A stretch of 64,000 bases of DNA from Macrostomum lignano (Eukaryota), in assembly GCA_002269645.1 (NCBI GenBank), contig NIVC01000434.1, positions 186,001 through 250,000 on the forward strand, written 5' to 3'. Both the position numbers and the translations under genes were made by a program. This document shows, one piece after another, positions 161 through 57,230 of this stretch (positions within the stretch are counted from its first letter, which is position 1; every line of letters starts with the position of its first letter). The notes beneath the pieces were generated by a model. That model made no database searches. It saw only the letters and a list, made by a program, of their open reading frames with translations, and was not told the origin of the DNA.

Positions 161-1135
161 CCAGCAAAGAATGGCAGCCGAGGAGCAGAACAGCAGAAGT
201 ACCGATTATAGAGCTGTGGCTGGCACAGCAAGATAAAAACACTTTTTATTAGCTATACAAATAATTCCTTTACTTTCAAACGAGCTCATGCGGTTACTAA
301 CGCATCGGGTGCCGTTATATGATATGCTATTTATAACTTTCGTACAGTTTCAAACACAAAAATTTATTAGCAAAAGTGTTATAAATCGTCACTTTTTACA
401 GATTATTAATAAGGCCTTTCTTTATACCATTATTGAGTAAAAACTTCAGTTAAATTGCAATAAGAAATATTTTGGCTCGAGACATAAACATGATAAAAAT
501 GTAATATTGGAAATGTCTATTACAAGTCTCTTTGTAAACACAACATTTGCTACTTATTAAAATAGCAATAGTAAGTTATTAATCGTGAAGGGAATCAGCT
601 GTTAAAAGGAATTTTACATTGCATAGCAACAACAAGCGACGTTTTGACAACAAAAAGAGTTAATAATAATTATAATCAGTTACTACTATTAAAATTGTAT
701 ATATTATTAAAAACAGCCAAGGAGGAAATTAACTGGCACAAATTCGGTAATAACTGTTAACCGCACAGCCAGATGGATGATGTTACCTGTATGCCGCACG
801 GCATCAGACATTACACTGTAGTAAATGTAGCCCTGTCTACAACTATAAAATATGATCATTTTGGTCCAATTATTAAAAGTGCTGTCCTGACACAGCGCAC
901 AACACAGTTGATGAAAAAACACATTTTTAAGGCTTAGCGCAGATTTTAGCACTGAAGAAGGACTGCAGATGACTGACAGGACAGCGCAGTAATTGCAAAT
1001 TTTACAACATTTCAATAGTATCATACATGAAATCTTCTCCCATGTTCGACTACTATGCCGGCATGAAGGTTGGCCAAGAAAGAAATTAGAAAAATAAGTT
1101 AACTGGTTAGCAATATACCGGCTGGCTAAATGGCA

Positions 1136-1138
1136 GTC

Positions 1139-1179
<41 letters not shown>

Positions 1180-1186
1180 GGCAGAA

Positions 1187-1217
<31 letters not shown>

Positions 1218-1228
1218 AAGACACACAG

Positions 1229-1269
<41 letters not shown>

Positions 1270-1280
1270 AAGACACACAG

Positions 1281-1327
<47 letters not shown>

Positions 1328-1498
1328 GGCAGACAGACAGACAGACAGACAGACAGGCAGGCAGACAGGCAGAAAGACACACAGACAGACGGACAGACAG
1401 ACAGACACACAGACAGACAGACAGACAGGCAGGCAGACAGACAGACAGACAGACAGACAGGCAGGCAGACAGGCAGAAAGACAGACAGACAGACAGGC

Positions 1499-1539
<41 letters not shown>

Positions 1540-1654
1540 CACAGACAGACGGACAGACAGACAGACACACAGACAGACAGACAGACACACAGACAGACAG
1601 ACAGACAGACAGACACACAGACAGACAGACAGACAGAAAGACACACAGACAGGC

Positions 1655-1689
<35 letters not shown>

Positions 1690-1855
1690 AAGACACACAG
1701 ACAGGCAGACAGACAGACAGACACACAGACAGACAGACAGACAGAAAGACACACAGACAGGCAGACAGACAGACACACAACAGGCAGACAGACAGACAGA
1801 AAGACACACAGACAGGCAGACAGACAGACACACAGACAGGCAGACAGACAGACAA
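1136..1855. repeat. (GACA)n microsatellite with GGCA/CACA/GAAA variants, probably in the par-3 3' UTR region
   Basis: About 720 bp of 4-bp period; explains the SVCL/QTDR ORFs. Confidence 0.95.
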
Positions 1856-2177
1856 AATACAAACATAAAAAGAGGAACAGAGGACATACAAAAACACAGA
1901 CAAGCAGAAGTCAGCACTATCAAATCGGTGAGACAACATTGGAAAATCAAACTTATAATTAAGCACAGCACAGCTAGAAGCACATGAGGAGATAAAGTTA
2001 GAATTGATCAAGCGGTTAAGCAAAGAAAAACAAAATAAAGAAATAAAAAATATACGCTCAATTTTAAAGGTACTGATGGACGCCTGTGTCTGTAGTAGAA
2101 TCACACGTTAGCAGCAAGCTATTATTGCAATAATAATTATTAACATATTCATATATTACACAGATTACATAGTTATC

Positions 2178-15239
<13,062 letters not shown>

Positions 15240-17624
15240 TTCTAATTAGCAATGCTATGGCCTTCAACTTAAATCCATGAGACAGTTTGCTGCAAGGTAA
15301 AGTCCAAAACATTATTAATACAAAATTACTTTGAGTAGCTTTAATATACAATGGTTTTTATATGCCTAAATTAGCAAACAAATATCAAAATCTCACTAGA
15401 GTCCCTATTGTAAGGACTACAATACTTTGTTTATCATAGTACTAGGGCCTATATAACTATTGTCAAAGTACAAGCAATCCCAAAAGCCACAATTGTCATG
15501 GCTAGGGCCTATGGGATATATTTGGCAATAATAAATTTTGTAACTTATATAATTGATTGGTTTTTAAGTATAGCAATATAAATATTTGCATAAGTATCTA
15601 TTCTCTATTATTTCCTCATTAAATTTTGAAATAACAATATGTTAAAAAGGTGTAAGACCAAGATGGCCACAACATTAAATCTCTATTATTTCTGCTTTCT
15701 CTCCCATTAATTAGCAACTTAATAGCTATTATTTTATTATTATTATTTTGTTTTAATAAATCATATTTATAAATATTAATACAATAATAGATTTGAAACA
15801 AATTATCTATAATACAAAAACTTTTTAATGTTTATGCCAATTTATTCCTATAGGACCATATATTCTAATATATCATTATCAGTTTATTAAGAAACCATTG
15901 CTAATAATAAGGCTATGCAAAAATGAGATAAATATGCAACAAAGTATTTATTTTGTGCTTGGCTACATGCTTTATTTAATGGATAAATATCTATAGGTTA
16001 AGTTATAATAAAAGCTAGGCCAAAAGACAAAAGGGAATGATTATAATGTAATATAATTCTATTTTAGCATCTAAATTTTTAATTACTACCAACAGGAAAA
16101 TGGAAATGAGTGAAATATATAGACCTAGGATTACTATTATTTATTTAGACATACATGCGCTACCTCTAAAATTCAGTCGGCCGTGTGACTTGTTTTTAAC
16201 AAAAATGTGACATAGTTTTTTGGCCAAAAATGTGACTTACATGTAAAAAAATCCTAAAGCAAAATTAATGCAACTTTGGGTAAACGGCAGGAGTAGCTAT
16301 GACTGTCTTATTAAGCCAAAATGCCTCATCAGCTACTTAGTACTACTACTTTGGTGTTTTTTGGGTGGGCATTTTTGCGACTTCCTTGGTTGGCCGCCAA
16401 ATCAGTTAGCCAGATTGGCCAACTTGGCCAACTGTTGCACATATATGTATTTAGATATTTAGATCTATGGCCATCTTGGTATGTAGCCATCTTGGTCATA
16501 TGCTATTAAAAATAGGGCCTATATTATAAATCTAGTAAATCCCTATTGTAAATAATGACATTTTATAGATAGCTATCTGATACAATTTGAAGTATTGGCA
16601 CATATAAAGCATTTCTCTAATGTAGCATACTATGTCAAAGGGGCTGAGGGGTAAGGTAGTTTACCAAAGGGGGTGACATATGCTTAAAAGTTGGCATGCA
16701 GAAATGAAAGCATATTGAAAGGTATTGCACTAGGCCTAGCTATAATGAAAATGTGACAATACAAAATTAAATGAGACAAAATCTATATTATTGCTAAATT
16801 TACTAGCCTATAGGAAAAAGCTTTGCAAGTAAATCTTGGTAAGGAGTTGGTAGGTAAATTGTCTATAGGTAATTTTTGTGCTCAGTTCATACTTTTTTGT
16901 AAATGAGTTCATACTAAAAGACATAGAAGATGGCTGTGTCTTCAATATAGAATCTATTTGACACTGGAAACAGTGGCAGTCTTTTTATTGCCAAAAATAA
17001 AAGTGATAATACTGTATATGCTTACATGGCAAATATGCCCTTAAGCTCATACATTATAATAGATACAACTGCCATTTTGATATAAGTACTATTTCCAAAA
17101 AAATGTCCAACTTTTCTAATCTAGCCAAGCAAATATATCAATCTGAATTAGCAAGATTAAGTGGCTATTTATCCTTATCTTATCCTTATTATCCTATAGT
17201 ATTAGGCCCATAATCATTTGTTAAATAGTTTTTTTGTTGAATTCAATTTCTGTTTATTTTTAAGCCATAAGGCATAATATCTATATATTATATAGGCTTA
17301 AATTAAATTTTATTGTGGTAAAGTTCACTATTAAGTTAAGTTATATTATATATAGGCCTAGGCCCTATAGTATAATTAGTATTAGGTATTATGTTGTCAA
17401 AACTTTAATTATTAAATAAACCTCAAACTTAAATGGTACACCAAAGAGGTACTCCAAATAGTATTACAGCATACTGATGCTTTTGTGGTGATAAAACCCT
17501 AGACATAGCATAATACTATACTATTAATACTATGTAGTAGATTAGGTATAATGCCAATGGAAAGGCTTATAAACAGGAACGGTTTTAAACTGTATTTAAC
17601 TCAACCAAGGTCTTGGACACTTAC

Positions 17625-18008
17625 ACACTTTTAAGTCCTACGACACGAGTACAGCACATACGTGTGGGTAGGGCCCAATAAGATAGGATGGGACCACCAA
17701 CATTCGCAAAATCTGCGGATTTCCGAGATATTTCTAAATTTAGAAAAATGATTTGAGTAAATAAAACAAAGTTTTGACACTAATAGTTATAGCGTAATAC
17801 AAATAGTTTCTAGTGTATTAGATGTATCTTAACATAAATTTACAGAATTTACAATATTTTCTAAAATATTCTAAGTACATTTGCTTGTTTATACATAAGC
17901 GTCATTTGCAATATTTAACACGCCAAGTGTCATATTTTATTGCCCCTAGCCAAAGGCGTACTTCAGTATTTCGATAACATTATATACCGGTTTGATACAC
18001 CGTTAAAG
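17625..18008. promoter_or_regulatory. Probable bidirectional promoter with non-coding first exons of par-3 (minus) and the CERK-like gene (plus)
   Basis: Minus-strand donor GT|GTAAGT at 17624 pairs with acceptor TTTACCTTGCAG near 15289; plus-strand donor AAAG|GTAAGT at 18009 pairs with acceptor TTTTTCAG near 18311; CpG content resumes abruptly at 17640. Confidence 0.55.
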
Positions 18009-18330
18009 GTAAGTATTCGTTCATAATTAATATGACCAAGGGCTATAGTCAGTACCTGATAAGTATATTATGCTTCCATCTATAGCACAGCGTGACACAG
18101 CTAGTTGCATGCTCGAAATACTTTGTTCTTTGTATAAAAATATTTATTTGCATACATGATGTAACGTCACATTTTTATAGTATATTGCGGCAATATTTAA
18201 TATGAACAAAATTACATGCTATAAAAATCAAGTGCAACTTTTAAATACCAGCTTTTTGTCCATAGCAGCAAATCACTCAATCTACCAAGAAATATTTTGT
18301 AAATTTTTCAGCAAGCGAATTGATGATCAC

Positions 18331-20669
18331 ATGAGCTTACCAGTGCCTGTTGACGATTTCAAGCCACCAAAAAAGGTTGCTCCTATCGTCAAACAGCCCC
18401 GTAGAAGGCAAATATCAGATGAAGAAAGCGACGAAACAGATTTACATGCGATCGTTGAGGGTTGCTGCAAAGGCGTCTCAGTAACTGTCAGTTTGAAGAA
18501 TGGCATACTTATTTGGCAGCAAGGTTAGTTAAATTCGGTGCGAAATAAACTACAAGAGTTAATAATCTAGATGTATATGCCGAAAATGTCGCCGGCTCAT
18601 GAATCTGTTTTTACTTTACAGTCGGTCGGAAAACCTCCGGCGTAGCGGCAAAGCTGTCATCAGGTCTAGTCAAGCTCGATAAGCAGCCAGCAACTATTCG
18701 CATTCCGCTCTGTGACGTTATCTCCGTCGTCGCTGATAGTCTGGATGAAGGCCTCACTAATGACGATGCCCGATTGACTATTGTTGCAAGGCGCCCCGTG
18801 GACGGCGCCATTCAAGGCCGTTGGTGCCTATGGGAGCGGACGATGGCGCCCCTCCTGTCCAGTTTTCAAGTTGCCAAACGATGGACAGGGCGAGCAAATG
18901 GTGCATTGCTGCACCGATGTCCACAGTTCTTTCAACGAGTTGGGCTGCTAATAAATTCGAGCACCACCACCGATTGGAGCATCAACCGAGTTCTGCTACC
19001 CATCTTGAAACGATTCAACATTGACATCGACGCGAGAATCGACGCTTCCGATGCCAAACAATTAGCGACGCTGGCGGCCAGGTCGGTGACGGAGCTGAGC
19101 GACCTCGACTCGCTGCTGGTGGTCGGTGGCGATGGCACCGTGCGTCTGTTGTGCGCTTCTCTGCTGTCAACTCGGCAAAAGCTCCCCCCGCTGTGCATTT
19201 TACCATCCGGTCGGCACTCCGACATTGCGCGCAGTCTGATGGGCGGTCCGAAGGCAGATTTTGAGACCGCTTTGGTACACTTGCTGGCAGGTGAGCAAAG
19301 GAAATTCATTAAACTTTGGGGATAATTCAAATTAAGTTTGAGTGTAACGTTTGGTTGCTTTTATTGAATGAATGGTTTCCTATCTTCATTCAATCTACCG
19401 TATCTACTATTGTAATCTCCCAGGGGTCTAGTGTCTCTCAGGCTTTCTTTCCCAGGGGTTTAGGAGTCACTCTCGGGAGGTCTCTCCCAGGGGTTTAGAG
19501 AGTCACTCTCGGGGTGTCTCTCCCAGGGGTTTAGAGAGTGACTCTCGTGATTGTCTCTCCCAGGGGTTTAGAGAGTGACTCTCGGGATGTCTCTCCCAGG
19601 GGTTTAGAGTGAACACGCTCGGGAGGTCTCTCCCAGAGATTTAGAGAGTCACTCTCGTGGTTCCGATATCCCTTTGGGTTTAGAAACGTCCCTGGTGAAA
19701 TATCAGGTTATCACTCTCCAGATACTCGTGACATTAGGGAACAATTTCCAGTGACAGAAACTCTGATTCCTTGCTGATTCCAGGCAGCACCAGGAAAATA
19801 AACTGCAGCAGAGTTCTCTCCGGCAGTGCCCCGGGCAGTCTCGCATTGCCCATCGGCTGGTTTTTCAACGCCTCACTCGGCTTGCCAACAGCCGCCCTGG
19901 CCCGCCTCAATCGGCACCTCCTGTTTCCCGACACCAAATACGATCGCGCACTGGCTAGCGTCATCGCCAAGCCCGACTTCCGGCCAGTTTCCGGGACGTT
20001 GCGGCTGCAGTTGGCACCCGCGTCTGGTGGGGATCCATCGGATGGACAGACTTGCCTGCCAGGGTGAGAGCCCAGTCGATAACATTGTTATCGCGTTTAT
20101 ATTCTGAATTCGACTTTCTTAGAAGTGGCTCTTATCATAGGTTCTATACAGAATCAGTTTGTAGAATATTGAATAGTATTCATATTAGAATATGTTTCTT
20201 CCATTCATGTCAATCAATAATCTGATACCTCTCCCTGCTTCTCCCTCTTCTTTATTACACAAATCTTCTTCGCTGTCTCCCTCTCTCTCTCCCTCCTCTC
20301 CCTCCCATGTTTCCTCTACATCTGTTTTTTCTTCCCCTCTCCATCCCTTTTACAACCCCCTCAATTGTCCCTTTTGCTCTCTTGAAATAGTACATTAATT
20401 CCTTTGCTCCCGCAGATGCTCAGTCTGCAAAGCCGAAAGTGAACGCCAACGAAGCTCCACCGACGATCTCGTTGATTGCGATGCTAGCGACGCTTCAGGA
20501 TGGCAGTGCGACTTCTCCGATCCGGTGCGAGAATTCGACCCGCTGGACAGCTCGAACTGCAGCAGCGCCCTGAGCGGTGAGCAGAGATTTAGCTGACTGA
20601 CTAACTGACTAACTAACTAACTGACTGACTAACTAACTAACTAACTGACTAACTGACTAACTAACTGAA

Positions 20670-20718
<49 letters not shown>

Positions 20719-20759
20719 GACTAACTGACTAGCTAGCTAACTAACTAACTAACTAACTG

Positions 20760-20834
<75 letters not shown>

Positions 20835-20839
20835 GACTG

Positions 20840-20906
<67 letters not shown>

Positions 20907-20907
20907 G

Positions 20908-20949
<42 letters not shown>

Positions 20950-20959
20950 CAACTAACTG

Positions 20960-20991
<32 letters not shown>

Positions 20992-23900
20992 GCTAACTAA
21001 CTAACTAACTAACTAACTAACTGACTGACTAAACACCCACAGCTCAGCTATCCAGAGCTCGCCCATCGCAATCAGATGCCACAGTGGACTCCGCACCCAT
21101 TGGCGAGCCCGTAGTTGAATCAGACGGCTGGCTCACCATTAGCGGTGAGTTTCTCTGGATCGGCGTGTACTCCTTGAGTGGTCGATCGGGCTTCTGTCCG
21201 GGCGGTCTGTCTCCCAGATGTCATGCCAACGATGGCTCTCTGGATGTTGTACTGCTGCGTTTGCCAGTCAGCCGACTGACCGATGATGAGGCGCGAAAGA
21301 GACTGTCGAAAATTGCTGCCACCGAATTCGCAGCAGCACTCTGCGGCGGCTCCTCTTGGGGGAGTCACGTGAGTTTACAGTCACTTGGGTGTTTATAGTC
21401 ACTTGGGTGTTTATAGTATCGTGGGTGTTTATAGCCACTTGGGTGTTTATAGCCACTTGGGTGTTTATAGTCTCTTGGGTGTTTACAGTCACTTGGGTGT
21501 TTATAGTCACTTGGGTGTTTATAGTCTCTTGGGTGTTTACAGTCACTTGGGTGTTTATAGTCACTTGGGTGTTTATAGTATCTTGGGTGTTTATAGCCAC
21601 TTGCGTGTTTATAGTATCTTGGGTGTTTATAGTCTCTTGGGTGTTTATAGCCACTTGGGTGTTTATAGTCTCTTGGGTGTTTATAGTCTCTTGGGTGTTT
21701 ACAGTTTCTTGGGTGTTTATAGTCTCTAGGGTTTTTATAGCCACTTAGGTGTTTATAGTCTCTTCCATTTAATTTATAGTCTTTTGGGTGTTTATAGTAT
21801 CTTGGTTAATTATAGTCATTTGGGTGTTTATAGTCATTTGGGTGTAATTTAAAGACTTTTGGGTGTTTATAGTCATTTGAGTGTTTATAGTCCCTGAGGT
21901 GTTTAGTCACTTGGGTGTTTATAGCCACTTGGGTGTTTATAGCCCCTTATGTGTATAGTCTCTTGGGTTTTTATAGTCATTTTCGTGTAATTTATAGTCT
22001 TTTAGGTGTTTACGAGCTATAGTCATTTGAGTGTTTATAGTCGCTAGGTTGTTTATAGTCTGTTTGGGTGTTTATAGTCGCTTGGGTGTTTATAATCTTT
22101 TTGGTGTTTATAGTCATTTGGGTGTTTATAGTCGCTAGGTTGTTTATAGTCTGTTTGGGTGTTTATAGTCGCTTGGGTGTTTATAGTCATTTGGGTGTTT
22201 ATAGTCGCTAGGTTGTTTATAGTCTGTTTGGGTGTTTATAGTCGCTTGGGTGTTTATAGTCATTTGGGTGTTTCACTGAAAACTCACGTGATAAACCGCC
22301 AAATTTGTCCCACAGTTGAGCCTCGACTACGTCAGCTGCTACCGATGCAAAACTGTTCGATTTCAACAGAGCACCGAGCCACAGAGGCAGCATACGGACG
22401 GACAGCATACTGAGAATCCCATACGATCTAGCACTGAGGATTCTATTAAAGTGAGTAGATAAATGCAAAATACTTTTGGAAAGCAGTGAATAAGTTTTTG
22501 CCTGAAATATTGCTCAATAGTACCAAAAGTAGCACCGTAACAGCATGCGAGCTTTCGTTTCTTGGAACTATTCTAAGATGCTTTCCTACGAGATCAAGAA
22601 TCTTAAACCTTCAAATATATTTTCTAAGAAATGAAAGATCGTATCTGCTACGCACATGATATCCGCGTTAAGTATTGTAAGAAAGGGCAAGAGGAACTAT
22701 AATTTTATATTTAACGGAAGAAGAAAAGTCCACTGTGTTCCAATCTTCCATTTCCATTGCGTAATGCGAGAGAATATTGTGCAAGTAGTAAGGCCTGGGT
22801 TAGACTACATATTAGTAGCTTCTCTCAAGCCGCGACTGACTCCACTGACTCATGCATCTGGCGCGGTCGATTACTAGCTATAGGAATAGTACATGTCATG
22901 GACAAATGAATTAAAAGGACGCCAAATTTAATTTTCTTAGAAACGCATTAAGATACATTTTCGAGAGAGAAAGCATAGCGCTGAATGGCCGCGGGGCTTC
23001 GTCATAGAAAAATTTCGTTAAGTAAAATTTTTAACTCCTTACTTCTGAACTCAGCAACTCCTGACCAAGCAACTCCTGACCCACTAACTCCTGACCAAGC
23101 AACTCGACCAAGCAACTTCTGACCAAGCAACTCCTGACCAAGCAAATTCTGACCCACCAACTCCTGACCCACCAACTCCTGACCAAGCAACTCCTGACCC
23201 ACCAACTCCTGACCCACCAACTCCTGACTCACCAACTCCTGACCAAGCAACCCATGGCCAAGCAACTCCTGACCCACCAACTCCTGACCAAGCAACTCCT
23301 GACCCAACAACTCCTGACCAAGCAACTCCTGACCCACTAACTCCTGACCAAGCAACCCATGGCCAAGCAACTCCTGACCCACCAACTCCTGACCAAGCAA
23401 CTCCTGACCCAACAACTCCTGACCAAGCAACTCCTGACCCACTAACTCCTGACCCACCAACTCCTGACCCACCAACTCCTGACCCACTAACGATCCTGAC
23501 CCACCAACTCCTGTCCCACCAACTCTTGACCCACCAACTCCTGACCCACTAACTCCTGACCCACCAACTCCTGACCCACCAACTCCTGACCCAACAGCTC
23601 CTAACCCAATTTAGTCTCTTAGTTAGCGCAGAAACTCCCAAACTCCTGTACTCCAGAAACTCCCAAACTCCTGTACTCCAGAAACTCCATAATTCCCACA
23701 TGCATGAATTTCATTCATGTTCCATTTCCTAACCACCCAGCTGAACGAGACGACCACCCACGGCGGAAGCGACAGAGAATCAACGGAACTTCGCAGGCGT
23801 CGCCAATTCCAGCGAAGTCCTTCGCAGCTGGCTGACGTTCTCTGCGGCGATGATGACGAGATCGGTGACGATGGAGCCAGTAGTAACGGTGGGGGCACAA

Positions 23901-25764
23901 CGCTTTCCTCAGACGAGACGGCTGTAAGTCTAACATGAGTCGCATATGGGATCTGCCGATATAGGGGCGATGAAAGCGTCTATCTCAAGTTTTTGATTCT
24001 GTGTACTTTTCATGCAATTCGCGCTTATGCGGGTCATTGGGCAAGCCGCGATGAGAAAGTCAGGGCCATTGTGCACCCTGTGTTAGTGGAATGTGCATGA
24101 CTGCTTGCCTCCTGGCTGACTAAGCAAACTACTAGTATATGCAACTGCGAATGATGGGATCTAGCTAGAGTATAACTTCCAATCAACGCCCCCGGCCCCT
24201 CTGTTGGAGAGGAGTCGCTTTCTCAAAACCTAATTTTCACGTCAAAAAGCCGTGCACAGAATTTCATAAGCTCTGAATTTCATAAGCTCTGAATTTCACA
24301 ACGCCTAAAAGCACTATGGGGATACGATTTAGGGCGAAAGATTTAGGGTGAAATATTTAGGGCGAAAGATTTAGGGTGAAAGATTTAGGGCGAAAGATTT
24401 AGGGTGAAAGATTTAGGGCGAAAGATTTAAGGTGAAAGATTTAGGGCGAAAGATTTAGAGTGAAAGATTTAGGGCAAAAGATTTAGGGTAAAATATTTAG
24501 GGTGAAAGATTTAGGGCGAAAGATTTAGGGTGAAAGATTTAGGGTGAAAGATTTAGGGCGAAAGATTTAGGGTGAAAGATTTAGGGTGAAAGATTTAGGG
24601 CGAAAGATTTAGGGTGAAAGATTTAGGGTGAAAGATTTAGGGTGAAAGATCGTATCTCGAACCAGGACACGAGAATCAGACACGTTTACCGCTGAGCTGC
24701 TCGGCCTCCTAGCTTGAGACAAGGTCCGATATAGCAGTTTCAATTATTGCTTAACTATTGCTCATATCGGGGTTGTAGCCTTGTGGTTAGAGAGTCCGAC
24801 TCACGACTTGAAGGTCGAGGGTTCGATTCTCGATCCACTCAGAAGAATTTGTGTCCTTGAGCAAGACACTTAACTCTGCATTGCTTCAGTTCACCCAGCT
24901 GTAAAATGGATGCCAGTAGTAGCTGGGGTAGCTGAGGGGGTGTGTGGCGACTCCCCAGTCCTTGGACTGAACAGCCGTACGCAGCCTTCAGATGCGCCGC
25001 GCAATAGCTGCGGCTGAGCTGTCGGTTGCACATCTGGCCCTAATTGGGGAAGTGCAATCATATTTTTTATAATCGCACCCCATACTTTCCCTACTCAATT
25101 AGCCGTCGCACACTAAGTTGACTCCAACAGCAGCTTCCGCGGCTCATCGCGACTCCAGCTTAACCGATGAAGAAGAATCCGCTAAAGAACAAGCTGACTT
25201 GCAGCTGCATCAGAAGACAAAGAAGACAAAGAAAAGCTGGCATCGACGACTTGCCGCTTTGAAACCGGCGAAGCTGCTGCAGACTACGGCGGGCAGCTCC
25301 CCAAGGCACAGCAGCAGTCCTGCAGGAGGTGCGCACGGCAAAGATAAGTCAGCTGCCTTCCGCTCAGCTGAGCCAGCATTGGCAACGGCAACGCAGGACC
25401 TGAGGACGGAGATGTCTCGGTGGAATTTCGATTACAGCGAGGTTGAACTCGACGATGAGGTGGAATTTCGGTGAGTTTTGAAATAGCTGTCAAAAGGGAC
25501 ACGGTAATATCTCAGAACACACTGTGTGACCTTTAAAAGCTATTAAAAATCAAACGAAACCACAATTGATATCACAGCTCAAATGCAATGGTTTTATTGA
25601 GATGCCATGCAGCTCAAATAGGGTTTTTTGAGGTCTCAAAACTTCTATGGTAGTTGTGGGGCTTGTCAATGTGTACAATTAAATGTGAGTTCTGCAATTC
25701 GAATTTCAGTTGTTATCCGGACGCCTTGGAGATTTACTGTCCGGCTCCAGGTTCAGCTAGTTAA
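18331..25764 (+). CDS. cerk: Ceramide kinase family protein (PH-like plus DAGKc domain; CERK/CERKL-like), 9 coding exons
   Basis: Exons 18331-18523, 18622-19290, 19784-20063, 20416-20576, 21043-21368, 22316-22450, 23741-23923, 25103-25470, 25710-25764, all GT-AG and phase-consistent. VVGGDG ATP motif; CERK-type CxxxCxxC (CLPG|CSVC); [28 protein letters not shown]; SRWNFD..EVEFR|CYP. Confidence 0.85.
19420..19660. repeat. Intronic minisatellite, 36-bp unit TCTCTCCCAGGGGTTTAGAGAGTCACTCTCGGGGTG
   Basis: Period 36 at 19481/19517. Confidence 0.85.
20593..21032. repeat. (CTAA)n/(CTGA)n microsatellite filling CERK-like intron 4
   Basis: 4-bp period over about 440 bp, ending about 10 nt before the acceptor. 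Confidence 0.95.
21369..22270. repeat. Intronic minisatellite, 18-bp unit TGGGTGTTTATAGTCACT
   Basis: LGVYSH periodic ORF; begins at the donor of exon 5. Confidence 0.95.
23048..23610. repeat. Intronic minisatellite, 15-bp unit AACTCCTGACCCACC / AACTCCTGACCAAGC
   Basis: [10 protein letters not shown] periodic ORF. Confidence 0.95.
24327..24709 (-). repeat. 14-bp array (AGATTTAGGGYGAA)n preceded on the minus strand by a tRNA-like Pol III head
   Basis: About 23 units at 24327-24650; minus head GGAGGCCGAGCAGCTCAGCGG..GGTTCGAGATAC at 24709-24652. Confidence 0.75.
24769..25058 (+). mobile_element. tRNA-derived SINE family 1, second copy
   Basis: High similarity along its length to the reverse complement of 11731-12023 (A/B boxes, CORE-like domain, GC-rich 3' stem). 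Confidence 0.85.
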
Positions 25765-30463: not shown

Positions 30464-33400
30464 ATGGCTACATATTTAAATCTAGACGTAGTGCATTACA
30501 TTTGCTCGTGCAAAGTTAGCAAGCCTTTATGCCGCCTTTATCTATGCAAACACTGTTTTGAACTTCGATGTCAAGATTGTGTACTTCCAGAGGTATGCAT
30601 TTTCAGTTACTCTAAGTATAGAATATTTAGTATAATAATATATTTAATTTAGTATTGTTGCATTGACTATTGCCATATCATATGGCATAGGCTATGCAAA
30701 TTGTCGTTTATATGCTCTTGCTGATCTGTATTTGAATAGTCATAATATTGAAAGCATAGTGCTAAGCATAGGCCTAATAAAAATAAAACTTCCATTTATT
30801 TTTTAGGCCTATATAAAATTATTGATCAACAGCAACAACAACCAACTACACCAATATAGGTACACATGCCTAACACCCATCTAACCTGTCCAAATTGGAC
30901 AAGTGAAATGGCTGCTGGCCAAGGTAAATCACAAAACTGAAAATGCAAAAAAATAAAAAATTAGGGAAAAAAGAAGGTAGTTGTTATTTGTCCAGTGACT
31001 AGAGGAATAGCAATGTGGTTATTTGTCTGGTTACTGGATAATGACCATGCTTTCCTATTCGTCTGGTTAATACTAGGCCTAGACAAATAGGCATTTTGCT
31101 GTTTGTCTGGTTAAATTGATAATGCTAAAATATCTATTTCATAGAAACTACATGGGTAAATATTCCTAGACTGCAAATACTTCTTACTCGTATCTTGATT
31201 ATTATGTTGTTATACTAGTGTGTGTTAATATATCAAATTATGCCAAATTGAATAAATTGCTTTGCTTACTAGTATATAAGACAATATTAATCAGTATATG
31301 AGAAAAGGTCTTAAAAATCTAGAATATCCATCATGAAACAAATAGATATTTGTATTAGCAATTTAACTAGACAAATAGTAAAAAGGCTATTTATCCGGTC
31401 ACTAGACAAATAAAAATTGCCAAGAAAAAAGGAGAGGAAAAGAAAAGAAGGAAAAGAAAAAGAGGAGAAAGAGGAGAGAAAGAAAAAAGAGAAAAATGAG
31501 TGAAAGGCAAAAAAATTCATATACAAAGTGAAAATTAAGTCACAATCAAGAGGAACTAAGTTGCAATCAGGAGAAACTAAGTCACAAATCTGGACAAAAC
31601 TAAGTTGCACCAGATAGGTGAAATTTTAAGGTTGGACATGTGTATACACCAACCTTGGGCAAGCCATGTTGGGTTGCTATCAAAAGGTATGTAGCAATGT
31701 GCAGATTTGCACAGAATAGCAAGTTTGCAAGGGTTAGATTTTAATGTCTCTTAGAAGCTGTTATGACTTCTTCTCTAGCAGAAAACAGTGAGCGAAGACC
31801 TCTTAATAATTACTTTCAAAAACCAAGCGTCTTATTTGATGTTATCATAACATTTTTTTTTATTTTCAAGCTTGAAGCATCACTTTTTTTAGCTTATGGC
31901 TGGGTGTGTGCAATTGAGTTGTCTATGGCCATACCCAACAGAAGCTAGTTGTCAAATACAGACTTGTTTTTGCCTAACCAAGCCACTGTGGCCCTTGAAA
32001 TGATAGCCTAGTTAGTAGCAACATATCCTAAAGTGGCTTAGGGCAGTAGTGCTCTGCTTAGATAATGTTACTAACTAGCTATAAGTGCCAAATGTGTAGA
32101 GCTAGTTAGGTCATTAAAGCTAGACCTATCAATATAGCTTGTTTAACCTAAATTCTTGCTTTACACTGAATTTTAAGAGGCCTACATCTAATAGTTTGTA
32201 GTGTATTCACTATATTTTAGGTATTGTAGCATATTTCTATTTTCTATGATATTCTATAATATGCTTAAATCTTCATATTCTAGAAAGTTCTCCAATTAAA
32301 CAATGCATATATATGAAATAAGATAGTGTATAGTAAAATATTTGTATTCTAAAAACTTCCACATAAACACTCACTTACTATATTTGGTATTTTAAACTCT
32401 TGCGCACCCTTTCTAGAAACTACTTTTTTAACTTTCTGGATTCTAGAATATGTTCTATCAATACAAATAAAATTATATAACACCTTAACATGCAATTATT
32501 CAAGTCTCTTTCTTTTCCATAAAGGAAAACAATCAGAGCAAAACCAAAGCAAACAAACCACTAGGTTTTATGCCTCAATTATTTTTGCAATCCTATAAGT
32601 TCACTATCATCTTTACTTTGTGGACTTCTTAAAGGCCTTTGAATTAGTTTTGAGGTAGGTTATTATAAACATTTTGCTCATATATCATATAGTTGAGCAG
32701 CTACTGATAGCTATGTTAGCTCTATATTAAGAATCTTAGATAGTAGTTGTGATACTAGATTACCTTTCTAAGCTTTTGACATATCCTCTAGCATTCTCCA
32801 AGGGGACACCTTGGCCCCATTTGTTTTTTCTTATCTAGGACTAAATACTATATACTAGCCTCTTTGATAACTAGAAGACCAAAGGATTTTTTTCTGCAAA
32901 ATAAGCAAGCAATACCCTGAGAACCAACTCTATCTTAGTGTACATGGATGACCTAGTGCTATTGTCTAACATAGCTGAAGGAGCCTAACACCTACTAGAC
33001 TAGTTGATAGTAATGGCCATTACAATTGGACTACCCATGAATACCAAAAAGACAATGGAGCTTACTGTGCCAATAGACCTCCCAGCTAAATCTATACCAT
33101 TGCATAAACAGGCAGGTTGTATAATATTGCTGCCCTATGCAAAGAGTTTATTTATCTTAGTAGTCTTGTACCAAGTATCATGGATGACATGGCATAGCAC
33201 TTGGGGCACATCCACACTAGGGTGGACTGTCTTGCAGTGCCCCACATTGCTAGATTGACTAAAAGGGCAGCTTTTCTAGGCTATCATAAAAACCATCCTC
33301 CTTTACAATGCTAAAACATGGATACTGATTAGCCCATAGGAATGGCAAATCGAAGCTACTTATGCTAGACTTCTAAGAACCACTTTTGATATCTACTATT

Positions 33401-36400
33401 TAATAAAGCAATACAATTTTCTATTTGAGAATGATATGTAATTGAACCATTGACATTGCATTCTAAAAAAACTAAGCTTAGGCTTGTTGCTTATGTATAG
33501 ATACTTTTATATTTATTAATCAAGTGGTCCAAAGGCCAAAAGATTTCTAAATTAATTTAAATGTGTATCATAAATGAAAATTGAAAAGATATTCTAGTCC
33601 CTATAAATTAAGGTTTGAAATACTGTACTTAATAAGATGATATAAATGTTGAATAATTCTAGCATATAGAGTGATCTGGCATTAACTGTTGGCATAATTG
33701 TTATATAGAGGGGCCTTGGATACCCCTTGGTATACAGCTTAATACGAGTATACACAGATCATGAAGACAACAGGTGGGATTGAGTGTGTATATAGCTGTC
33801 TGTCTCTAATACAAAATACTTCATCTTTATGACTATGAATTACATTTTGCTGCCAGGCGAGCTTACTATTTCTTACACTTCTTGTCCCTCCAACATATGC
33901 TCAACAGGTGGACTGCCAATACTGCCCCAACTGCCTAGACTATATGTCATCTGGCGAGGCCAAGGTAAAAAAGAACCGCTGCAGTGCCTGCTATGACTGT
34001 CCCAGCTGCGGCCACACCCTGTCTACTAGGGCCACCTCTGCCACTCTGCCAAGCCCCGACGATCCAACAAAACAGGTCGCTCAGAAAGTCTATTACCTGC
34101 TGTGCGCATTCTGTCGGTAAGTACGAGCGTACTTTATCAGATTCTATATCAGTGCACCCAGAGTCTTGTGTTAATTCACTTCATTGGCCTTATTATGTGT
34201 CAACTAATTCCCAAATATCCCCTGAGAATTTGAGATTTATCACAAATACTTTTAGGGACATGGTGGCTACACGTCACACTCTAATTAGGTGGGTACCCGT
34301 CACAAAGACTCGTATGAACTTGGTGGGTGCCCGTCACAAAGACTCGTATGAACTGGGTAGGTACCCGTTAAAAAGACTTGTATGAACTGGGTGGGTACCC
34401 ATCACAAAGGCACTAGAGCAAAGGTACTCTTCACAAAGACTCATATCAACTAGGATTGGGTGGGTACCCGTCGCACAGAGTCAAAGACTCTACTATATAG
34501 AGTTGCTACTGGTAAGCAACAAAGAACTCAGACATGCCAGACAGTTTCGATCCATCATCACAAAGTCTGAATCTGAATTTTAATAACGCCAATCAGTTGG
34601 ACCACACGAGACGGCGGCATACCGGACCAGCGGGCGCCCTCTGTCCCGTGGCGCAACCTGGCCCAGGGCGCCGAGCTCAGGCAGGACAATTCCAAGCGAT
34701 TAACCACCCTGACCGAGGCGTTTCGCCAGCTGGCTCTGAAAGAGAAGGCCGAGAAGGAGCGCAAGAAGATTGCAGTTAGAAAGAAATCGTTTTTCTCCCC
34801 GGGTCTGACCGATCGATACGGCCTGGCCTCTGTGGCTTTGCGAAAGAAGAGTCTGGCCAATCCCAGCCATTTCACGTGAGTTGCTGGCCTGCACCTGATG
34901 CCTAGCTAGTAGTTGCACTAGTAACCTGGTTATATGCTTTGGTACTAATCCCATTTTATTCCTTCGTGTATTCACCACTGCTGTCCCATTGTGTGTTGGG
35001 GGGGGTCACTGCTGTCCCATTGTGTGTTTGGGGGGGTCACTGCTGTCCCATTGTGTGTTGGGGGAGGTCACTGCTGCCCCATTGTGTGTTTGGGGGGGGG
35101 GTCACTGCTGCCCCATTGTGTGTGTTTGGGGGGGGGGGTCACTGCTGCCCCATTGTGTGTTTGGGGGGGGTCACTGCTGCCCCATTGTGTGTGTTTGGGG
35201 GAGGTCACTGCTGCCCCATTGTGTGTTTGGGGGGGGGTCACTGCTGCCCCATTGTGTGTTTGGAGGGGTCACTGCTGCCCCATTGTGTGTGTTTGGGGGG
35301 GGGGTCACTGCTGCCCCATTGTGTGTTTGGGGGGGGGGGTCACTGCTGCCCCATTGTGTGTTTGGGGGGGGGTCACTGCTGCCCCATTGTGTGTGTTTGG
35401 GGGGAGGTCACTGCTGCCCCATTGTGTGTTTGGGGGGGTCACTGCTGCCCCATTGTGTGTTTGGGGGGGTCACTGCTGCCCCATTGTGTGTGTTTGGGGG
35501 GAGGTCACTGCTGCCCCATTGTGTGTTTGGGGGGGGGTCACTGCTGCCCCATTGTGTGTTTGGAGGGGTCACTGCTGCCCCATTGTGTGTTTGGGGGGGG
35601 GGGTCACTGCTGCCCCATTGTGTGTTGGGGGGGTCACTGCTGCCCCATTGTGTGTGTTTGGGGGGAGGTCACTGCTGCCCCATTGTGTGTTTGGGGGGGG
35701 GGTCACTGCTGCCCCATTGTGTGTTTGGAGGGGTCACTGCTGCCCCATTGTGTGTGTTTGGGGGGGTCACTGCTGCCCCATTGTGTGTGTTTGGGGGGAG
35801 GTCACTGCTGCCCCATTGTGTGTTTGGGGGGGGGGTCACTGCTGCCCCATTGTGTGTTTGGAGGGGTCACTGCTGCCCCATTGTGTGTGTTTGGGGGGGT
35901 CACTGCTGCCCCATTGTGTGTTTGGGGGGGGTCACTGCTGCCCCATTGTGTGTGTTGGGGGTGGGTCACTGCTGCCCCATTGTGTGTTGGGGGGGGGGTC
36001 ACTGCTGCCCCATTGTGTGTTGAGGGGGGTCACTGCTGCCCCATTGTGTGTTGAGGGGGGGTCACTGCTGCCCCATTGTGTATTTGGGGGGGGTCACTGC
36101 TGCCCCATTGTGTGTTTGGAGGGGTCACTGCTGCCCCATTGTGTGTGTTTGGGGGGGTCACTGCTGCCCCATTGTGTGTTTGGGGGGGTCACTGCTGCCC
36201 CATTGTGTGTGTTGGGGGTGGGTCACTGCTGCCCCATTGTGTGTTGGGGGGGTCACTGCTGCCCCATTGTGTGTTGAGGGGGTCACTGCTGCCCCATTGT
36301 GTGTTGAGGGGGGTCACTGCTGCCCCATTGTGTATTTGGGGGGGGGGTCACTGCTGCCCCATAGTGTGTTTGGGGGGGTCACTGCTGCCCCATTGTGTGT

Positions 36401-41277: not shown

Positions 41278-41598
41278 TTAGACAACGCCGCACACCATCG
41301 TGTTGTCTCCGGTTGAGAAGGCGTCACTCTTAGTCACGCTGCCGAACTTCATCCAGCAGGTGCCGCCGTTGTAGCGGGTCCAGGCGAAGTGGGTGCAGCG
41401 GTGGGTTCGGGCGCAGGCGCCACCGCACTGCTCGCCGGGCATCCGCTCATTCTTCAGATCGCGGTTGTAGAAGTCGCAACCGAACGCCCAGTTGCCGTTC
41501 CAGCGGATGCGTCGAGCCTCTGCTTGAGTTGACACGGCGCAAAGGAGACCCGCGAACACCAGTAGAACCTTCAACGAGCTGATACGGCCGGCCATCAT
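41278..41598 (-). CDS. Small secreted protein: signal peptide plus a single PAN/apple-like six-cysteine domain (106 aa from ATG at 41598)
   Basis: Hydrophobic leader LKVLLVFAGLLCAVSTQA; WAFGCDF..DL..QCGGAC..CTHFAW..GGTCWMK..MVCGV; about 73% identical (56/77 counted by eye) to the N-terminal domain of 44315-45283; AATAAA on the minus strand near 41150. Confidence 0.9.
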   Translation of the reverse strand: MMAGRISSLKVLLVFAGLLCAVSTQAEARRIRWNGNWAFGCDFYNRDLKNERMPGEQCGGACARTHRCTHFAWTRYNGGTCWMKFGSVTKSDAFSTGDNTMVCGVV

Positions 41599-52703: not shown

Positions 52704-55130
52704 GTTCTGCAGTCTACTCAAATGGTGATTCTAATTAGGCTCATATCATTGCAATGGTTTTTTAATAGCAAGAAGTGCATGAAGAGGTCTGTACACTGCA
52801 CTGTGTATATGTAATTTAAAAAGGTACACATGTACATTGCATGTCAAATAAACCGAGATACTCAAGTTAACAGACAACACAAAGAACAAATTAAGTAAGA
52901 TGGCAAGTTGGCAACCAAATTCATACATGCTATTCCTAGTCCATAGATAAGGGATGCAGTCGAAAATCGAAATCTTTATATTTTCATTATCGTCATGATG
53001 ATGGTGATTGACAAAATCTGTAAGATAATTATACATTTTATGACGACTTGGACCAAGGGCAAGGGAATATTTAGGAGATCCCTCTGGGGGATAGGGCCAT
53101 TTCAGCGATAAATTATTTTGGCGATAGACGTTTCGGCGAAATGCTTTATCAAATATAATTTATCGGTGTACGACTTTTTTAGGTACTAGTGTAACGATGT
53201 TGGTTTAGTAAAGTTTCTAAGTAGTGTACTTTGTTTACTTATAATTATTTAATTATTATTTGTACTTTACTTGCTTTTAAGTATGTCAATATATTATTTA
53301 TTTTTTGTTATACCGTACGCTCGTACAGTTCCAAGAATTTGTAGTGTTTAAACCGCGGGTAAAATTCAGTTTCGTTCATCTGGTTTTATATTTGGTTTAG
53401 TTTAGTTATATAATTTTTGTATTCATGTCAAATATAAAATTGCTTTATGCAATGAGCGATGCTAGGAGAATAGCAATTTGTTTTCTTTTGTTAGAAAAAA
53501 GTTCCCAATACCACACTCTAGATCAAATAGTAGCGCCAAACCTGGTTGATTTTGGCAATAAACTTTTTGGCGACAAGTCATTAATTAGGCTATAGCGACA
53601 ACCTTTTTGGCATCGTTGGCAACAAACCAAAAATCTATAGCAACAACATAGTAGGCTATATAGGCTTTATTTTTGAAAATATAATTTTTTTCATATATTA
53701 AATTGATTGGATAGGAAGCAATTATGAAAAGCTAGGCCTAACCAAAATTACAAAAAATCTACACTTATGTAACAAAGATATGTACATCTATATCACAGAT
53801 GTAAAAAAGTCATATAATAAAATATGGTCAAGCAATAAACATGGTAGTAGGCATGTGAGAATTTGTCATTTATCATAGTAATCGGGGCTGCAGTCATTTC
53901 GTCTGCCGCCTTTTTGTCTGCCAAAGAATTTTAGCAGACGAAACAACTTTTTTATTTATGTTTATTTTGGTTCACTTATTTAGTATTTTTTATGTAGGGA
54001 ATTAAAATAAATTAGTATAAGCAAGTTTTAAGTATGTTTTCTTATTTATATTGATACATTTTGTTTTTCTTCATTTTCTACGAAACCTAACTAACCTATA
54101 TAATACTAAGGTGGGGGTGGAGAAGAACTTTCTTAGGACAGTTGTTTTTGAATTTGCTGACACCAATGAGGTGGGGCGGATTCCTCGTTTGAATTGCCGC
54201 CAGCGTTGAGTTCGCACGAATAAAACCGAAAAAATGCGCAGACAAATCACAACAAAATTTCTTCTCCTGTTTTACTCCGACAGCCGGGTTCTCAAGTCCG
54301 GGGGGAGGGTAGTCGTAATCGTAGTGGAGCGGTCGTTAGCGGCGCGGTCGTTCAAAGCGGTGAAACAACAGAGATTTCTGACTTCGAAAATTGATGCGTC
54401 GGTTATCTGAACTCGTTACTTTCAGTAGGGTAGTTGCTGCCACCACTGTAATTTATGTATTATGGAACGAATAAGTCTCAGAGCTTTCTTCGAGATGAGA
54501 ACTTTGGTTATTTTATGCCCCACGGGCAAATGACTCAAGAGAATACTATGGCCTTGGAATAGTGAATAAATATAGTTAATTATTGGAATTTATTAGATTG
54601 ACTTATTTCAAGCAGGCTGGATAATAAAATAAATATTACATGACACTACGCGGATGAGATGCGGGCCGAGGTCGAAAAATGTTTCGACTGGGCTTAAATG
54701 AGCAGAAAACAGTAGCACTAAATTTGAATGGTAGTAGAAGAAGTAATAGAAGGAGCAGTTGAAGGAGCAGTTAAAGGAGCAGTTGAAGGAGCAGTTGAAG
54801 GAGCAGTAATATAAATCATCACTTTAAATAGAGGGGAGTGACTGGTCACGCAGTGGGAACAGAGGCTGGGCATGCACAGTGGGAGAGAAAATCACGTAAA
54901 AGGGGCGGCTTAAACACATAGGAAAAAAACAAAATTACGGCATACATCCAACTCTGTGTAAGCAGTACATGTTGCGGGTATAGACAGAAACCAACATCGG
55001 GAGTGATGTCACTCCAATAAAGGGGGAAATGCAGCGGTTCACCATGCACATGCAAAAATTAAACATGCCAAATTCCAGTCATCGCATCTTACGTGGCAAC
55101 CCGCCTGCCACATGCGTGGGGCAGCCGGCA

Positions 55131-56759: not shown

Positions 56760-57230
56760 GCACTGCTTTTACCTGAAAGCATAAGGAGAACGGCAAAAAT
56801 AACAGCAATTGATACCTGCTTTTGTCCTGGAAAGCATAAGGCATTGGCAAAATTGAGAAATAACAACTGCTTTTGACCCTCAAGCATAAGGAGAAATACA
56901 CCAAATGAAACCTGCTTTTATCCTGAAAGCATAAGGAAAGTACATTGAAAATTAAAATTAGCGCCTGCTTTTATCCTGAAAGCATAAGGAAACAGCAAAA
57001 TTGAAAAATGACACCTGCTTTTATCCCAAAAGCATAAGGAAACAGCAAAATTGAAAAATGATGCCTGCTTTTATCCCGAAAGCATAAGGAAACAGCAAAA
57101 TTGGAAAAATGAATGCCTGCTTTTATCCTGAAAGCATAAGGAAACAGCAAAATTGGAAAAATGAATGCCTGCTTTTATCCTGAAAGCATAAGGAAACAGC
57201 AAAATTGAAAAATGAAGTTTAAAAATCTGC
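56760..57230. repeat. 50-52 bp tandem repeat (CCTGCTTTTATCCTGAAAGCATAAGGAAACAGCAAAATTGAAAAATGA) in the gypsy 3' non-coding region
   Basis: Starts at 56964, 57014, 57064, 57116 and 57168, with degenerate copies upstream. Confidence 0.9.

What the first reader, a model, noticed from the sequence alone, without database searches (positions are those of the whole stretch)
15289..17624. CpG-free, CAG/CTG-poor, TAG/CTA-rich domain confined to the first intron of par-3
Seen (manual counts): about 6 CpG in 15241-17579, all inside one patch at about 16150-16390, against roughly 50 expected from base composition. In 15361-16020, TAG+CTA is about 33 and CAG+CTG about 2, whereas the neighbouring intron (13921-14220) is near 1:1 and CpG-rich. 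The boundaries coincide with the inferred 5' UTR intron. Established: 5mCpG deamination gives TpG/CpA excess, not TpA excess; CpA-to-TpA conversion is the hallmark of fungal RIP or of CpA methylation by DNMT3-type enzymes. Inference: a germline, promoter-proximal cytosine modification or deamination system acting on both CpG and CpA. I know no description of this in an animal.
Basis: partly seen in the sequence, partly recalled or inferred. Interest (0 to 1): 0.78.

Follow-up and report, generated by a model that had tools for sequence, protein, structure and literature searches.

The report
CpG deserts beside first exons, flatworm
In this Macrostomum lignano flatworm locus, kilobase stretches of non-coding DNA next to the first exon of three genes have lost almost all CpG, which most likely records patchy germline DNA methylation rather than a new RIP-like deamination system.

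Summary
Window 15290-17624 has 7 CpG against about 50 expected, and 15361-16020 has TAG+CTA 33 against CAG+CTG 2. AT content does not explain this: 54 GC-matched tiles from the same window all keep at least 2 CpG per 250 bp.

The domain is not unique. A second fills intron 1 of a dynactin-p62 gene (30593-33856). A third lies directly upstream of the ATG exon of an HDAC11-like gene in a collinear M. lignano contig. The three are unrelated in sequence but share one signature: CpG o/e 0.1-0.2, CAG/CTG 0.6x, TAG/CTA 1.7x and WGGCCW palindromes 4-14x.

The boundary is sharp on the promoter side and fades into the gene body. Between the two copies, CpG transitions are 3/9 inside domain 2 against 21/796 outside.

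M. lignano is reported to keep DNMT1 and DNMT3. The best reading is therefore a footprint of 5'-biased gene-body CpG methylation.

RIP is rejected: (CpA+TpG)/(ApC+GpT) is 1.28-1.31, the DNA is unique, and CpA is not depleted. A slow extra CAG-to-TAG process fits the composition, but the copy differences show no sign of it. That point stays open.

The parts
15290..17624 (-). Domain 1: inferred 5'-UTR (first) intron of par-3. It is CpG-free except for one patch, with GC 0.29.
   Evidence: 7 CpG against 50.4 expected. The CpG-free gaps run 15179-16158 and 16395-17580. On the minus strand the AG acceptor is at 15290 and the GTAAGT donor at 17624-17619. No Pfam, Rfam or tRNA match and no transposon structure.
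16158..16396 (.). Patch inside domain 1 that keeps 6 CpG, with GGCCG and TGGCCA motifs. It may be a younger insertion or a protected element.
   Evidence: CpG positions; sequence; local CpG o/e 0.58.
14997..15239 (-). par-3 ATG exon (MKVTVSFGG..., Par3 N-terminal domain). The coding part is about 15022-15239.
   Evidence: ORF. Hits carrying PF12053. CpG o/e 0.66.
17625..17720 (-). Putative non-coding exon 1 and promoter edge of par-3, where CpG returns to normal.
   Evidence: CpG o/e 0.91 here and 1.26 in 17721-18200, at GC 0.29.
30464..30592 (+). Dynactin-p62 (DCTN4-like) exon 1, holding the ATG.
   Evidence: ORF. PF05502 Dynactin_p62 gene called at the homologous place in L001. CpG o/e 0.83.
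30593..33856 (+). Domain 2: intron 1 of the dynactin-p62 gene, CpG-poor and AT-rich. The acceptor is at 33856 or 33907.
   Evidence: 9 CpG against 88.5 expected. Same k-mer signature as domain 1. 94% identical to L001 19061-20987, which is also CpG-poor at o/e 0.11.
32640..33400 (+). Decayed reverse-transcriptase relic (YMDD motif) inside domain 2. It has many stops and about one CpG.
   Evidence: Translations. Pfam RVT_1 E = 3.4e-6, 27.4 bits, just under the cut-off.
33857..34125 (+). Dynactin-p62 exon 2, partly CpG-depleted, with raised CpG transitions between the copies.
   Evidence: CpG o/e 0.56. CpG transitions 5/37 against CHH 10/189 in 33857-34479.
53614..53882 (.). Edge of domain 3, the upstream region of the HDAC11-like gene. 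In the window it is cut off by a CpG-rich insertion that starts at 53883. The full domain is L001 2107-5616.
   Evidence: 269-bp CpG-free gap. Collinearity with L001 ends at 53882. Domain 3 statistics.

Best explanation
These are footprints of patchy germline (or stem-cell-to-germline) CpG methylation in Macrostomum lignano.

Inferred mechanism: methylation by the retained DNMT1/DNMT3 starts just downstream of the first exon of some broadly expressed genes. It covers 2-3.5 kb and fades into the gene body. 5-methylcytosine deaminates to thymine, so unconstrained intron DNA there has lost nearly all CpG, while neighbouring exons keep part of theirs through selection. Promoters and the rest of the locus are unmethylated and keep CpG near expectation.

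The extra features are AT-richness, few CAG/CTG, many TAG/CTA and many WGGCCW. I attribute these mainly to old, neutral DNA sitting near a context-dependent mutational equilibrium. Off-target CAG methylation by DNMT3 may contribute.

Shown: the depletion, its recurrence, its polarity, and the local CpG hypermutability. Inferred: methylation as the cause, and the enzymes.
For: 1. CpG o/e is 0.14, 0.10 and 0.19 in three unrelated sequences. GC-matched neighbours sit at 0.86-1.26.
2. All three domains abut a first coding exon: par-3, dynactin p62 and HDAC11-like. The promoter side is sharp. On the gene-body side exons are at 0.44-0.66 and the next introns run from 0.22-0.73 back to about 0.9.
3. 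An RT relic inside domain 2 is as CpG-free as its surroundings, so the loss happened in place.
4. A GC-richer segment inside domain 3 (L001 3500-4170), which I take to be a later insertion, has CpG o/e 0.22.
5. In window-versus-L001 differences, CpG transitions are 3/9 in domain 2 and 5/37 in the adjoining exon 2 region, against 21/796 outside. Fisher P = 0.0017, or 8e-5 with the exon 2 region pooled in. Outside the domains CpG is no more mutable than other C (1.7-3.5% against 2.6-4.2%).
6. There is no strand asymmetry, which fits a duplex mark.
7. Papers report that M. lignano keeps DNMT1 and DNMT3 and has low 5mC, with the genomic pattern undescribed.
8. An independent assembly (GCA_002269645.1) shows the same domain, so this is not an assembly artefact.
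Against: - No methylation data were available, so 5mC on these loci is inferred.
- There is no TpG/CpA excess: o/e is 1.04-1.14 against 1.14 in controls. A simple simulation of CpG decay predicts CAG/CTG rising to 1.8, yet it is 0.76-0.96 in domains 1 and 2. CpG decay alone therefore does not give the full composition.
- The hypermutability test rests on 3 events in the domain proper.
- The fourth gene with a visible 5' end, AGK-like at about 18843, has no such domain.
- The par-3 intron and the transcription start sites are inferred without RNA data.
- Only about 85 kb of the genome was examined.
Confidence: 0.6

Rival explanations
1. As in the best explanation, but DNMT3-type non-CpG methylation at CAG also acts in the same domains. 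Its deamination turns CAG into TAG.
For: - After the CpG-containing triplets, CAG/CTG is the most depleted triplet (0.60x). TAG/CTA is among the most enriched (1.71x), and CAA/TTG barely changes (1.12x). That is the asymmetry expected if only the C of CAG is hit.
- All CAG-containing 4-mers are down by 0.5-0.83x, and CTAG and TAGG are up 3x.
- A decay simulation needs an added CAG-specific C-to-T rate to reproduce TAG 1.7, CAG 0.8, CTAG 2.6, TpA 1.0 and CpA/TpG 1.17.
- The signature recurs in three unrelated domains and in the RT relic.
Against: - Between the two copies, CAG-context transitions are 2/29 against 36/552 for other non-CpG C. A current 6-fold rate is rejected (P = 1e-4) and a 3-fold rate is marginal (P = 0.06).
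- CpA transitions are 12/224, not raised.
- The GC-richer, apparently later segment in domain 3 has lost its CpG (o/e 0.22) but keeps CAG at o/e 1.86.
- CAG is also low for about 500 bp in two CpG-normal flanks.
- The TAG surplus exceeds the CAG deficit.
Confidence: 0.2
2. The composition came with the DNA. On this view the domains are old AT-rich, CpG-poor insertions such as transposon debris, or simply the oldest neutral DNA of the genome. CpG loss would then be genome-wide history and not a regional mark.
For: - Domain 2 holds an RT relic.
- Much of the CpG-normal remainder is visibly young: tandem arrays and intact transposon ORFs.
- C after G is about half as mutable as other C both inside and outside the domains, which would enrich GC, GCC and GGCC in old DNA.
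Against: - The three domains share no sequence, and no copy of them occurs elsewhere in 85 kb.
- Domain 1 has no transposon structure or coding remnant.
- The edges coincide with exon junctions and are polar.
- CpG in the flanking AT-rich unique DNA is not depleted and not hypermutable, while it is hypermutable inside.
Confidence: 0.12
3. A RIP-like or APOBEC-like deaminase system acts on promoter-proximal DNA.
For: TpA/ApT is slightly higher in the domains (1.06-1.08) than in controls (0.98), and there is a TAG excess.
Against: - (CpA+TpG)/(ApC+GpT) is 1.28-1.31, above the usual RIP threshold of 1.03 (from my own knowledge) and above the controls at 1.20.
- The targets are single-copy.
- CpA is not depleted overall, and CAA, CAT and CCA are up.
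- There is no strand bias, and no TpC or CpC signature stands out.
Confidence: 0.03
4. Selection shapes the sequence. On this view CpG is avoided and WGGCCW motifs are kept because the first intron or outron is a regulatory element.
For: - WGGCCW palindromes are 4-14x enriched inside the domains and absent from the flanks.
- Position next to first exons is typical of intronic enhancers.
Against: - Domain 2 diverges faster between the copies than neighbouring DNA: 3.6% non-CpG differences against 1.6-2.6%.
- It tolerates a 570-bp indel.
- It contains a dead RT.
Confidence: 0.05

Closest known systems
Sparse, 5'-biased gene-body CpG methylation of housekeeping genes in holometabolous insects (honey bee, Nasonia, ants), with its 'low CpG o/e' footprint
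   Same: The genome is otherwise unmethylated, with CpG near expectation. Methylation footprints are limited to a subset of broadly expressed genes. They start downstream of the TSS or first exon and leave the promoter untouched. The review PMC9246332 describes sparse methylation of a few genes linked to TSS chromatin. The 5' bias itself comes from my own knowledge of that literature.
   Different: Here the footprint is seen mainly in one long intron or outron, with o/e near 0.1. The neighbouring exons are only half depleted. The animal is a flatworm whose methylome pattern is said to be undescribed. The CAG/TAG and GGCC features are not part of the insect picture, as far as I know.
Mosaic methylation domains of Ciona and other invertebrates
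   Same: Kilobase-scale alternation of CpG-poor and CpG-normal DNA, ascribed to germline methylation. This is established knowledge.
   Different: Those domains usually span whole transcription units. Here most of par-3 (4-15 kb) and the rest of the dynactin gene keep normal CpG.
DNMT3-dependent non-CpG methylation (mCAG or mCAC) in mammalian stem cells, oocytes and neurons
   Same: It would give exactly the asymmetric CAG-to-TAG decay that the composition suggests. The review PMC9246332 notes DNMT3A-dependent non-CG methylation in vertebrates.
   Different: I know of no case where it leaves an evolutionary footprint. It is not demonstrated here, and the recent differences between copies show no CAG excess.
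Fungal repeat-induced point mutation (RIP)
   Same: AT-rich, TpA-rich, CpG-poor patches with many stop codons.
   Different: RIP acts on duplicated DNA and depletes CpA. Here the DNA is unique and the CpA index points the wrong way.

Membership tests
Methylation-driven CpG depletion (gene-body or mosaic 5mC footprint) | CpG o/e far below that of composition-matched neighbouring DNA | tested here: met
   0.10-0.19 against 0.86-1.26
Methylation-driven CpG depletion (gene-body or mosaic 5mC footprint) | CpG transitions locally raised relative to other C and relative to outside DNA | tested here: met
   3/9 in the domain and 5/37 in the adjoining exon region against 21/796 outside. Non-CpG C in the domain is 6.5%. 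Numbers are small.
Methylation-driven CpG depletion (gene-body or mosaic 5mC footprint) | Excess of the decay products TpG/CpA | tested here: not met
   CpA/TpG o/e is 1.04-1.14 against 1.14 in controls. The simulation predicts 1.29.
Methylation-driven CpG depletion (gene-body or mosaic 5mC footprint) | DNMT1 and DNMT3 present in the genome | not tested
   Taken from papers only (PMC11292947 and PMC9246332, both citing Wasik et al. 2015). The genes are not in this window.
Methylation-driven CpG depletion (gene-body or mosaic 5mC footprint) | 5mC measured on the residual CpGs of the domain in germline DNA | not testable with these tools
   No methylome data were at hand, and the Wasik et al. 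paper is not held.
Fungal-type RIP | (CpA+TpG)/(ApC+GpT) below about 1.03 | tested here: not met
   1.28-1.31 in the domains, 1.20 in controls
Fungal-type RIP | TpA/ApT raised above unaffected DNA | tested here: inconclusive
   1.06-1.08 against 0.98 in controls and 0.92 for the whole window. The whole window already exceeds the fungal threshold of 0.89, so the index is not calibrated for this genome.
Fungal-type RIP | Targets are duplicated sequences | tested here: not met
   No second copy within the window or L001, and no similarity among the domains
DNMT3-type non-CpG (CAG) methylation footprint | CAG/CTG depleted and TAG/CTA enriched, with TAG gain larger than CAA gain | tested here: met
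   0.60x, 1.71x and 1.12x against GC-matched controls. P = 2e-8 per tile.
DNMT3-type non-CpG (CAG) methylation footprint | Raised C-to-T change at CAG in recent divergence | tested here: inconclusive
   2/29 against 36/552. This excludes a 6-fold rate but not a 1.5- to 2-fold rate.
Transposon or foreign insertion | Terminal repeats, target-site duplication, coding remnants, or other copies | tested here: not met
   Domain 1 has none. Domain 2 has only one RT relic covering about a quarter of it. No other copies.

The most novel reading that the evidence does not exclude
In M. lignano the de novo methyltransferase marks a narrow zone behind the first exon so densely, in the germline or in neoblasts, that CpG and, more slowly, CAG cytosines have both decayed. 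That would leave the first evolutionary footprint of non-CpG (CAG) methylation seen in an animal genome. WGGCCW sites would be the surviving or protected G+C.
Probability: 0.18. Interest if true: 0.75.

Novelty: new variant of a known kind. Interest (0 to 1): 0.47.

Why it matters
[quoted passage not shown] M. lignano is a laboratory model that still has DNMT1 and DNMT3.

If these CpG deserts are methylation footprints, they predict from sequence alone where the sparse 5mC of this animal sits: a few kilobases behind the first exon of some genes, with a sharp edge at the first exon-intron junction. That would give a simple genome-wide map to test against existing bisulfite or long-read data.

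It would also give a tractable system for asking how DNMT3 is excluded from promoters and recruited just downstream. The unexplained CAG/TAG and GGCC features offer a concrete test of whether non-CpG methylation ever shapes animal genomes.

Tried and rejected
- AT content alone: rejected by the GC-matched controls.
- Tandem repeats as the cause: the other long CpG-free gaps (1550-1926, 4810-5560, 7427-7868, 20575-21060, 21604-21984, 23105-23491, 34965-36501) are tandem arrays. The two domains are complex sequence.
- Shared repeat family: sensitive blastn among the three domains and against the window gave only weak AT-rich matches.
- Transposon structure, RNA genes and tRNAs in domain 1: none found.
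- Transcription-coupled strand bias: none found.
- Fetching the homologous par-3 intron from another assembly failed:
  - par-3 exon 1 and the AGK-like gene have no M. lignano entry in the protein collection.
  - Exact look-ups of three window ORFs found nothing.
- Polarising changes in the RT relic against intact relatives:
  - The 84-residue stop-free piece found only one marginal hit, so this was dropped.
- Reading Wasik et al. 2015 for the bisulfite result: the paper is not held.

Full report
**Observation.**
- Window 15241-17579 holds 6 CpG, all between 16158 and 16395.
- 15289-17624 holds 7 CpG against 50.4 expected from base composition (o/e 0.14).
- 15361-16020 has TAG+CTA 33 and CAG+CTG 2.
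- The comparison intron piece 13921-14220 has 12 against 16.
- Poisson P for the CpG count is 2e-14, or 1e-11 if the expectation is scaled to the control o/e of 0.86.

AT-richness does not explain the CpG loss. The window contains 54 non-repetitive 250-bp tiles with GC below 0.40 (mean 0.34). Every one keeps 2-10 CpG. The 22 tiles of the two domains keep 0-4, mostly 0.

**Organism and genes.** An intronless GH45 cellulase ORF (44315-45283, minus) is 98% identical to a Macrostomum lignano protein.
- Its contig (GCA_002269645.1, NIVC01000164.1) was fetched as L001. It is collinear in reverse with window 31380-53882 at 94-97% identity.
- par-3 lies on the minus strand. Its ATG exon is at about 15022-15239.
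- On that strand a good acceptor ends at 15290 and a GTAAGT donor starts at 17624.

**The feature recurs.** A list of the longest CpG-free gaps shows that all but two regions are tandem arrays.
- The second complex region is 30593-33856. It is intron 1 of a dynactin-p62 gene whose ATG exon is 30464-30592. It has 9 CpG against 88.5 expected.
- L001 adds a third: 2107-5616, directly upstream of the ATG exon of an HDAC11-like gene, with CpG o/e 0.19.
- In the window that third domain is cut at 53882/53883 by a CpG-rich insertion.
- The three domains share no sequence similarity.
- So 'confined to the first intron of par-3' is too narrow. 'Next to the first exon' holds in three of the four genes with a visible 5' end. 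The AGK-like gene at about 18843 has no such domain.

**Shape.** The boundary is polar.
- On the promoter side, CpG o/e jumps from 0.14 to 0.91-1.26 within about 100 bp at 17624.
- It jumps from 0.19 to 1.25 at L001 5616, and it is 0.83-0.86 in dynactin exon 1 and its upstream DNA. All of this is at the same low GC (0.29-0.33).
- On the gene-body side the next coding exons are half depleted (0.44-0.66).
- The following introns climb back, from 0.22-0.73 to about 0.9.

**Signature beyond CpG.** The pooled domains were compared with the GC-matched controls.
- The four CpG-containing triplets are at 0.1-0.2x.
- The next most depleted triplet is CAG/CTG (0.60x).
- The most enriched are GCC/GGC (2.0x), AGG/CCT (1.84x), CTA/TAG (1.71x) and CCA/TGG (1.54x). 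CAA/TTG is 1.12x. Per-tile P = 2e-8.
- At the 4-mer level all CAG words are down. CTAG and TAGG are up 3x and GGCC is up 4.7x.
- GGCC occurs almost only as WGGCCW: TAGGCCTA, TGGCCA, AGGCCT.
- There is no strand asymmetry.
- TAG and GGCC enrichment stop at the domain edge. Low CAG extends about 500 bp further in two of three flanks.

**Tests of mechanism.**
- RIP indices. TpA/ApT is 1.06-1.08 against 0.98. (CpA+TpG)/(ApC+GpT) is 1.28-1.31 against 1.20, the opposite of RIP. The DNA is also unique.
- In-place decay. Domain 2 contains a dead reverse-transcriptase relic (RVT_1, E = 3.4e-6) that is as CpG-free and TAG-rich as its surroundings. A GC-richer segment inside domain 3 (L001 3500-4170), which I take to be a later insertion, has CpG o/e 0.22 but CAG o/e 1.86. 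CpG loss is therefore much faster than any CAG loss.
- Differences between window and L001.
  - Inside domain 2, transitions per site are CpG 3/9, CAG 2/29, CTG 2/29 and other C 36/552.
  - In exon 2 and just downstream they are CpG 5/37 against 10/189.
  - In three outside regions they are CpG 21/796 against other C 74/2300.
  - CpG hypermutability is thus local: Fisher P = 0.0017, or 8e-5 with the exon 2 region pooled in.
  - CpA sites (12/224) and CAG sites are not raised.
- Simulation. Ordinary window DNA was decayed from GC 0.46 to 0.31.
  - With a 15-fold CpG rate, CAG/CTG is predicted to rise to 1.8 and TAG to reach 1.03.
  - Adding a 6-fold C-to-T rate at CAG gives TAG 1.71, CAG 0.80, CTAG 2.6 and TpA 1.0, close to what is seen.
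  - GGCC stays at 1.9 against the 4-14 observed.
  - A current 6-fold CAG rate is rejected by the copy differences (P = 1e-4). A 1.5- to 2-fold effect acting for a long time is not excluded.
- GpC context. C preceded by G changes about half as often as other non-CpG C, both inside (5/128 against 35/484) and outside (17/710 against 67/1898). This may explain part of the GC, GCC and GGCC surplus in old DNA.

**Literature.** M. lignano is reported to keep DNMT1 and DNMT3 and to have low 5mC (PMC11292947, PMC10658182). [quoted passage not shown] The primary paper could not be read. I found no paper describing CpG-free first introns in this species.

**Conclusion.**
- The best explanation is a footprint of sparse, 5'-biased gene-body CpG methylation: sharp at the first exon-intron junction and fading downstream. 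This is a known kind of process, seen here in an unusually clean, intron-limited form in a flatworm.
- The RIP or deaminase reading is rejected.
- The narrower idea that CAG cytosines also decay there fits the composition. The limited divergence data do not support it, and it remains open, as does the WGGCCW surplus.
- All inferences about methylation are indirect. About 85 kb of the genome was examined, and the key rate test rests on few events.

Noticed in passing
window 44315-45283 (-) and 41278-41595 (-): An intronless GH45 cellulase with an N-terminal PAN domain, at 62% GC. Its closest relatives outside M. lignano are in bdelloid and monogonont rotifers, tardigrades and springtails, then fungi. 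This looks like an old horizontally acquired gene family. A small PAN-only ORF lies 3 kb away.
   Followed up: partly
window 53883-64000: A CpG-rich block that is absent from the collinear contig L001. It starts abruptly at 53883 (CGGGGCTGCAGTC...). It carries a gypsy-like RT (60050-60799), an integrase-like ORF (57689-58138) and a LINE-like RT (62943-63989). It is a nested transposon insertion into the CpG-free domain upstream of the HDAC11-like gene, and it keeps CpG o/e of 0.8-1.0.
   Followed up: partly
window 15290-17624, 30593-33856; L001 2107-5616: WGGCCW palindromes (TAGGCCTA, TGGCCA, AGGCCT) are 4-14 times more frequent than composition predicts inside the CpG-free domains. They are absent from the AT-rich CpG-normal flanks. 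No explanation was established.
   Followed up: partly
window 31606-32175: A 570-bp segment inside domain 2 that is missing from L001. It is flanked by near-identical direct repeats (GAAATTTTAAGG and GAATTTTAAGAGG). It is either a slippage deletion in one copy or an insertion in the other.
   Followed up: no
window 1001-2000, 4810-5440, 7440-7800, 19444-19682, 20494-21060, 21283-22300, 23046-23680, 24248-24720, 34965-36501, 37063-37647: Ten or so minisatellite arrays with units of 8-37 nt lie within 64 kb, several of them inside introns. Some are CpG-free simply because the repeat unit has no CpG, for example the 1.5-kb array at 34965-36501 with 61% GC.
   Followed up: partly
window 17625-18843: The putative par-3 exon 1 and the ATG of a divergently oriented AGK-like (diacylglycerol-kinase-domain) gene are only about 1.1 kb apart. 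This is a likely bidirectional promoter, with CpG o/e of 1.1-1.26. The AGK-like gene has no entry in the protein collection searched.
   Followed up: no
window 15657-15685, 16452-16500, 16925-16935: There are four copies of a CCAAGATGGC-type motif (AAGATGGCC or GGCCATCTT), two of them as a 29-nt inverted pair 766 nt apart inside domain 1. From memory it resembles a YY1-type core. Its significance is unknown.
   Followed up: no
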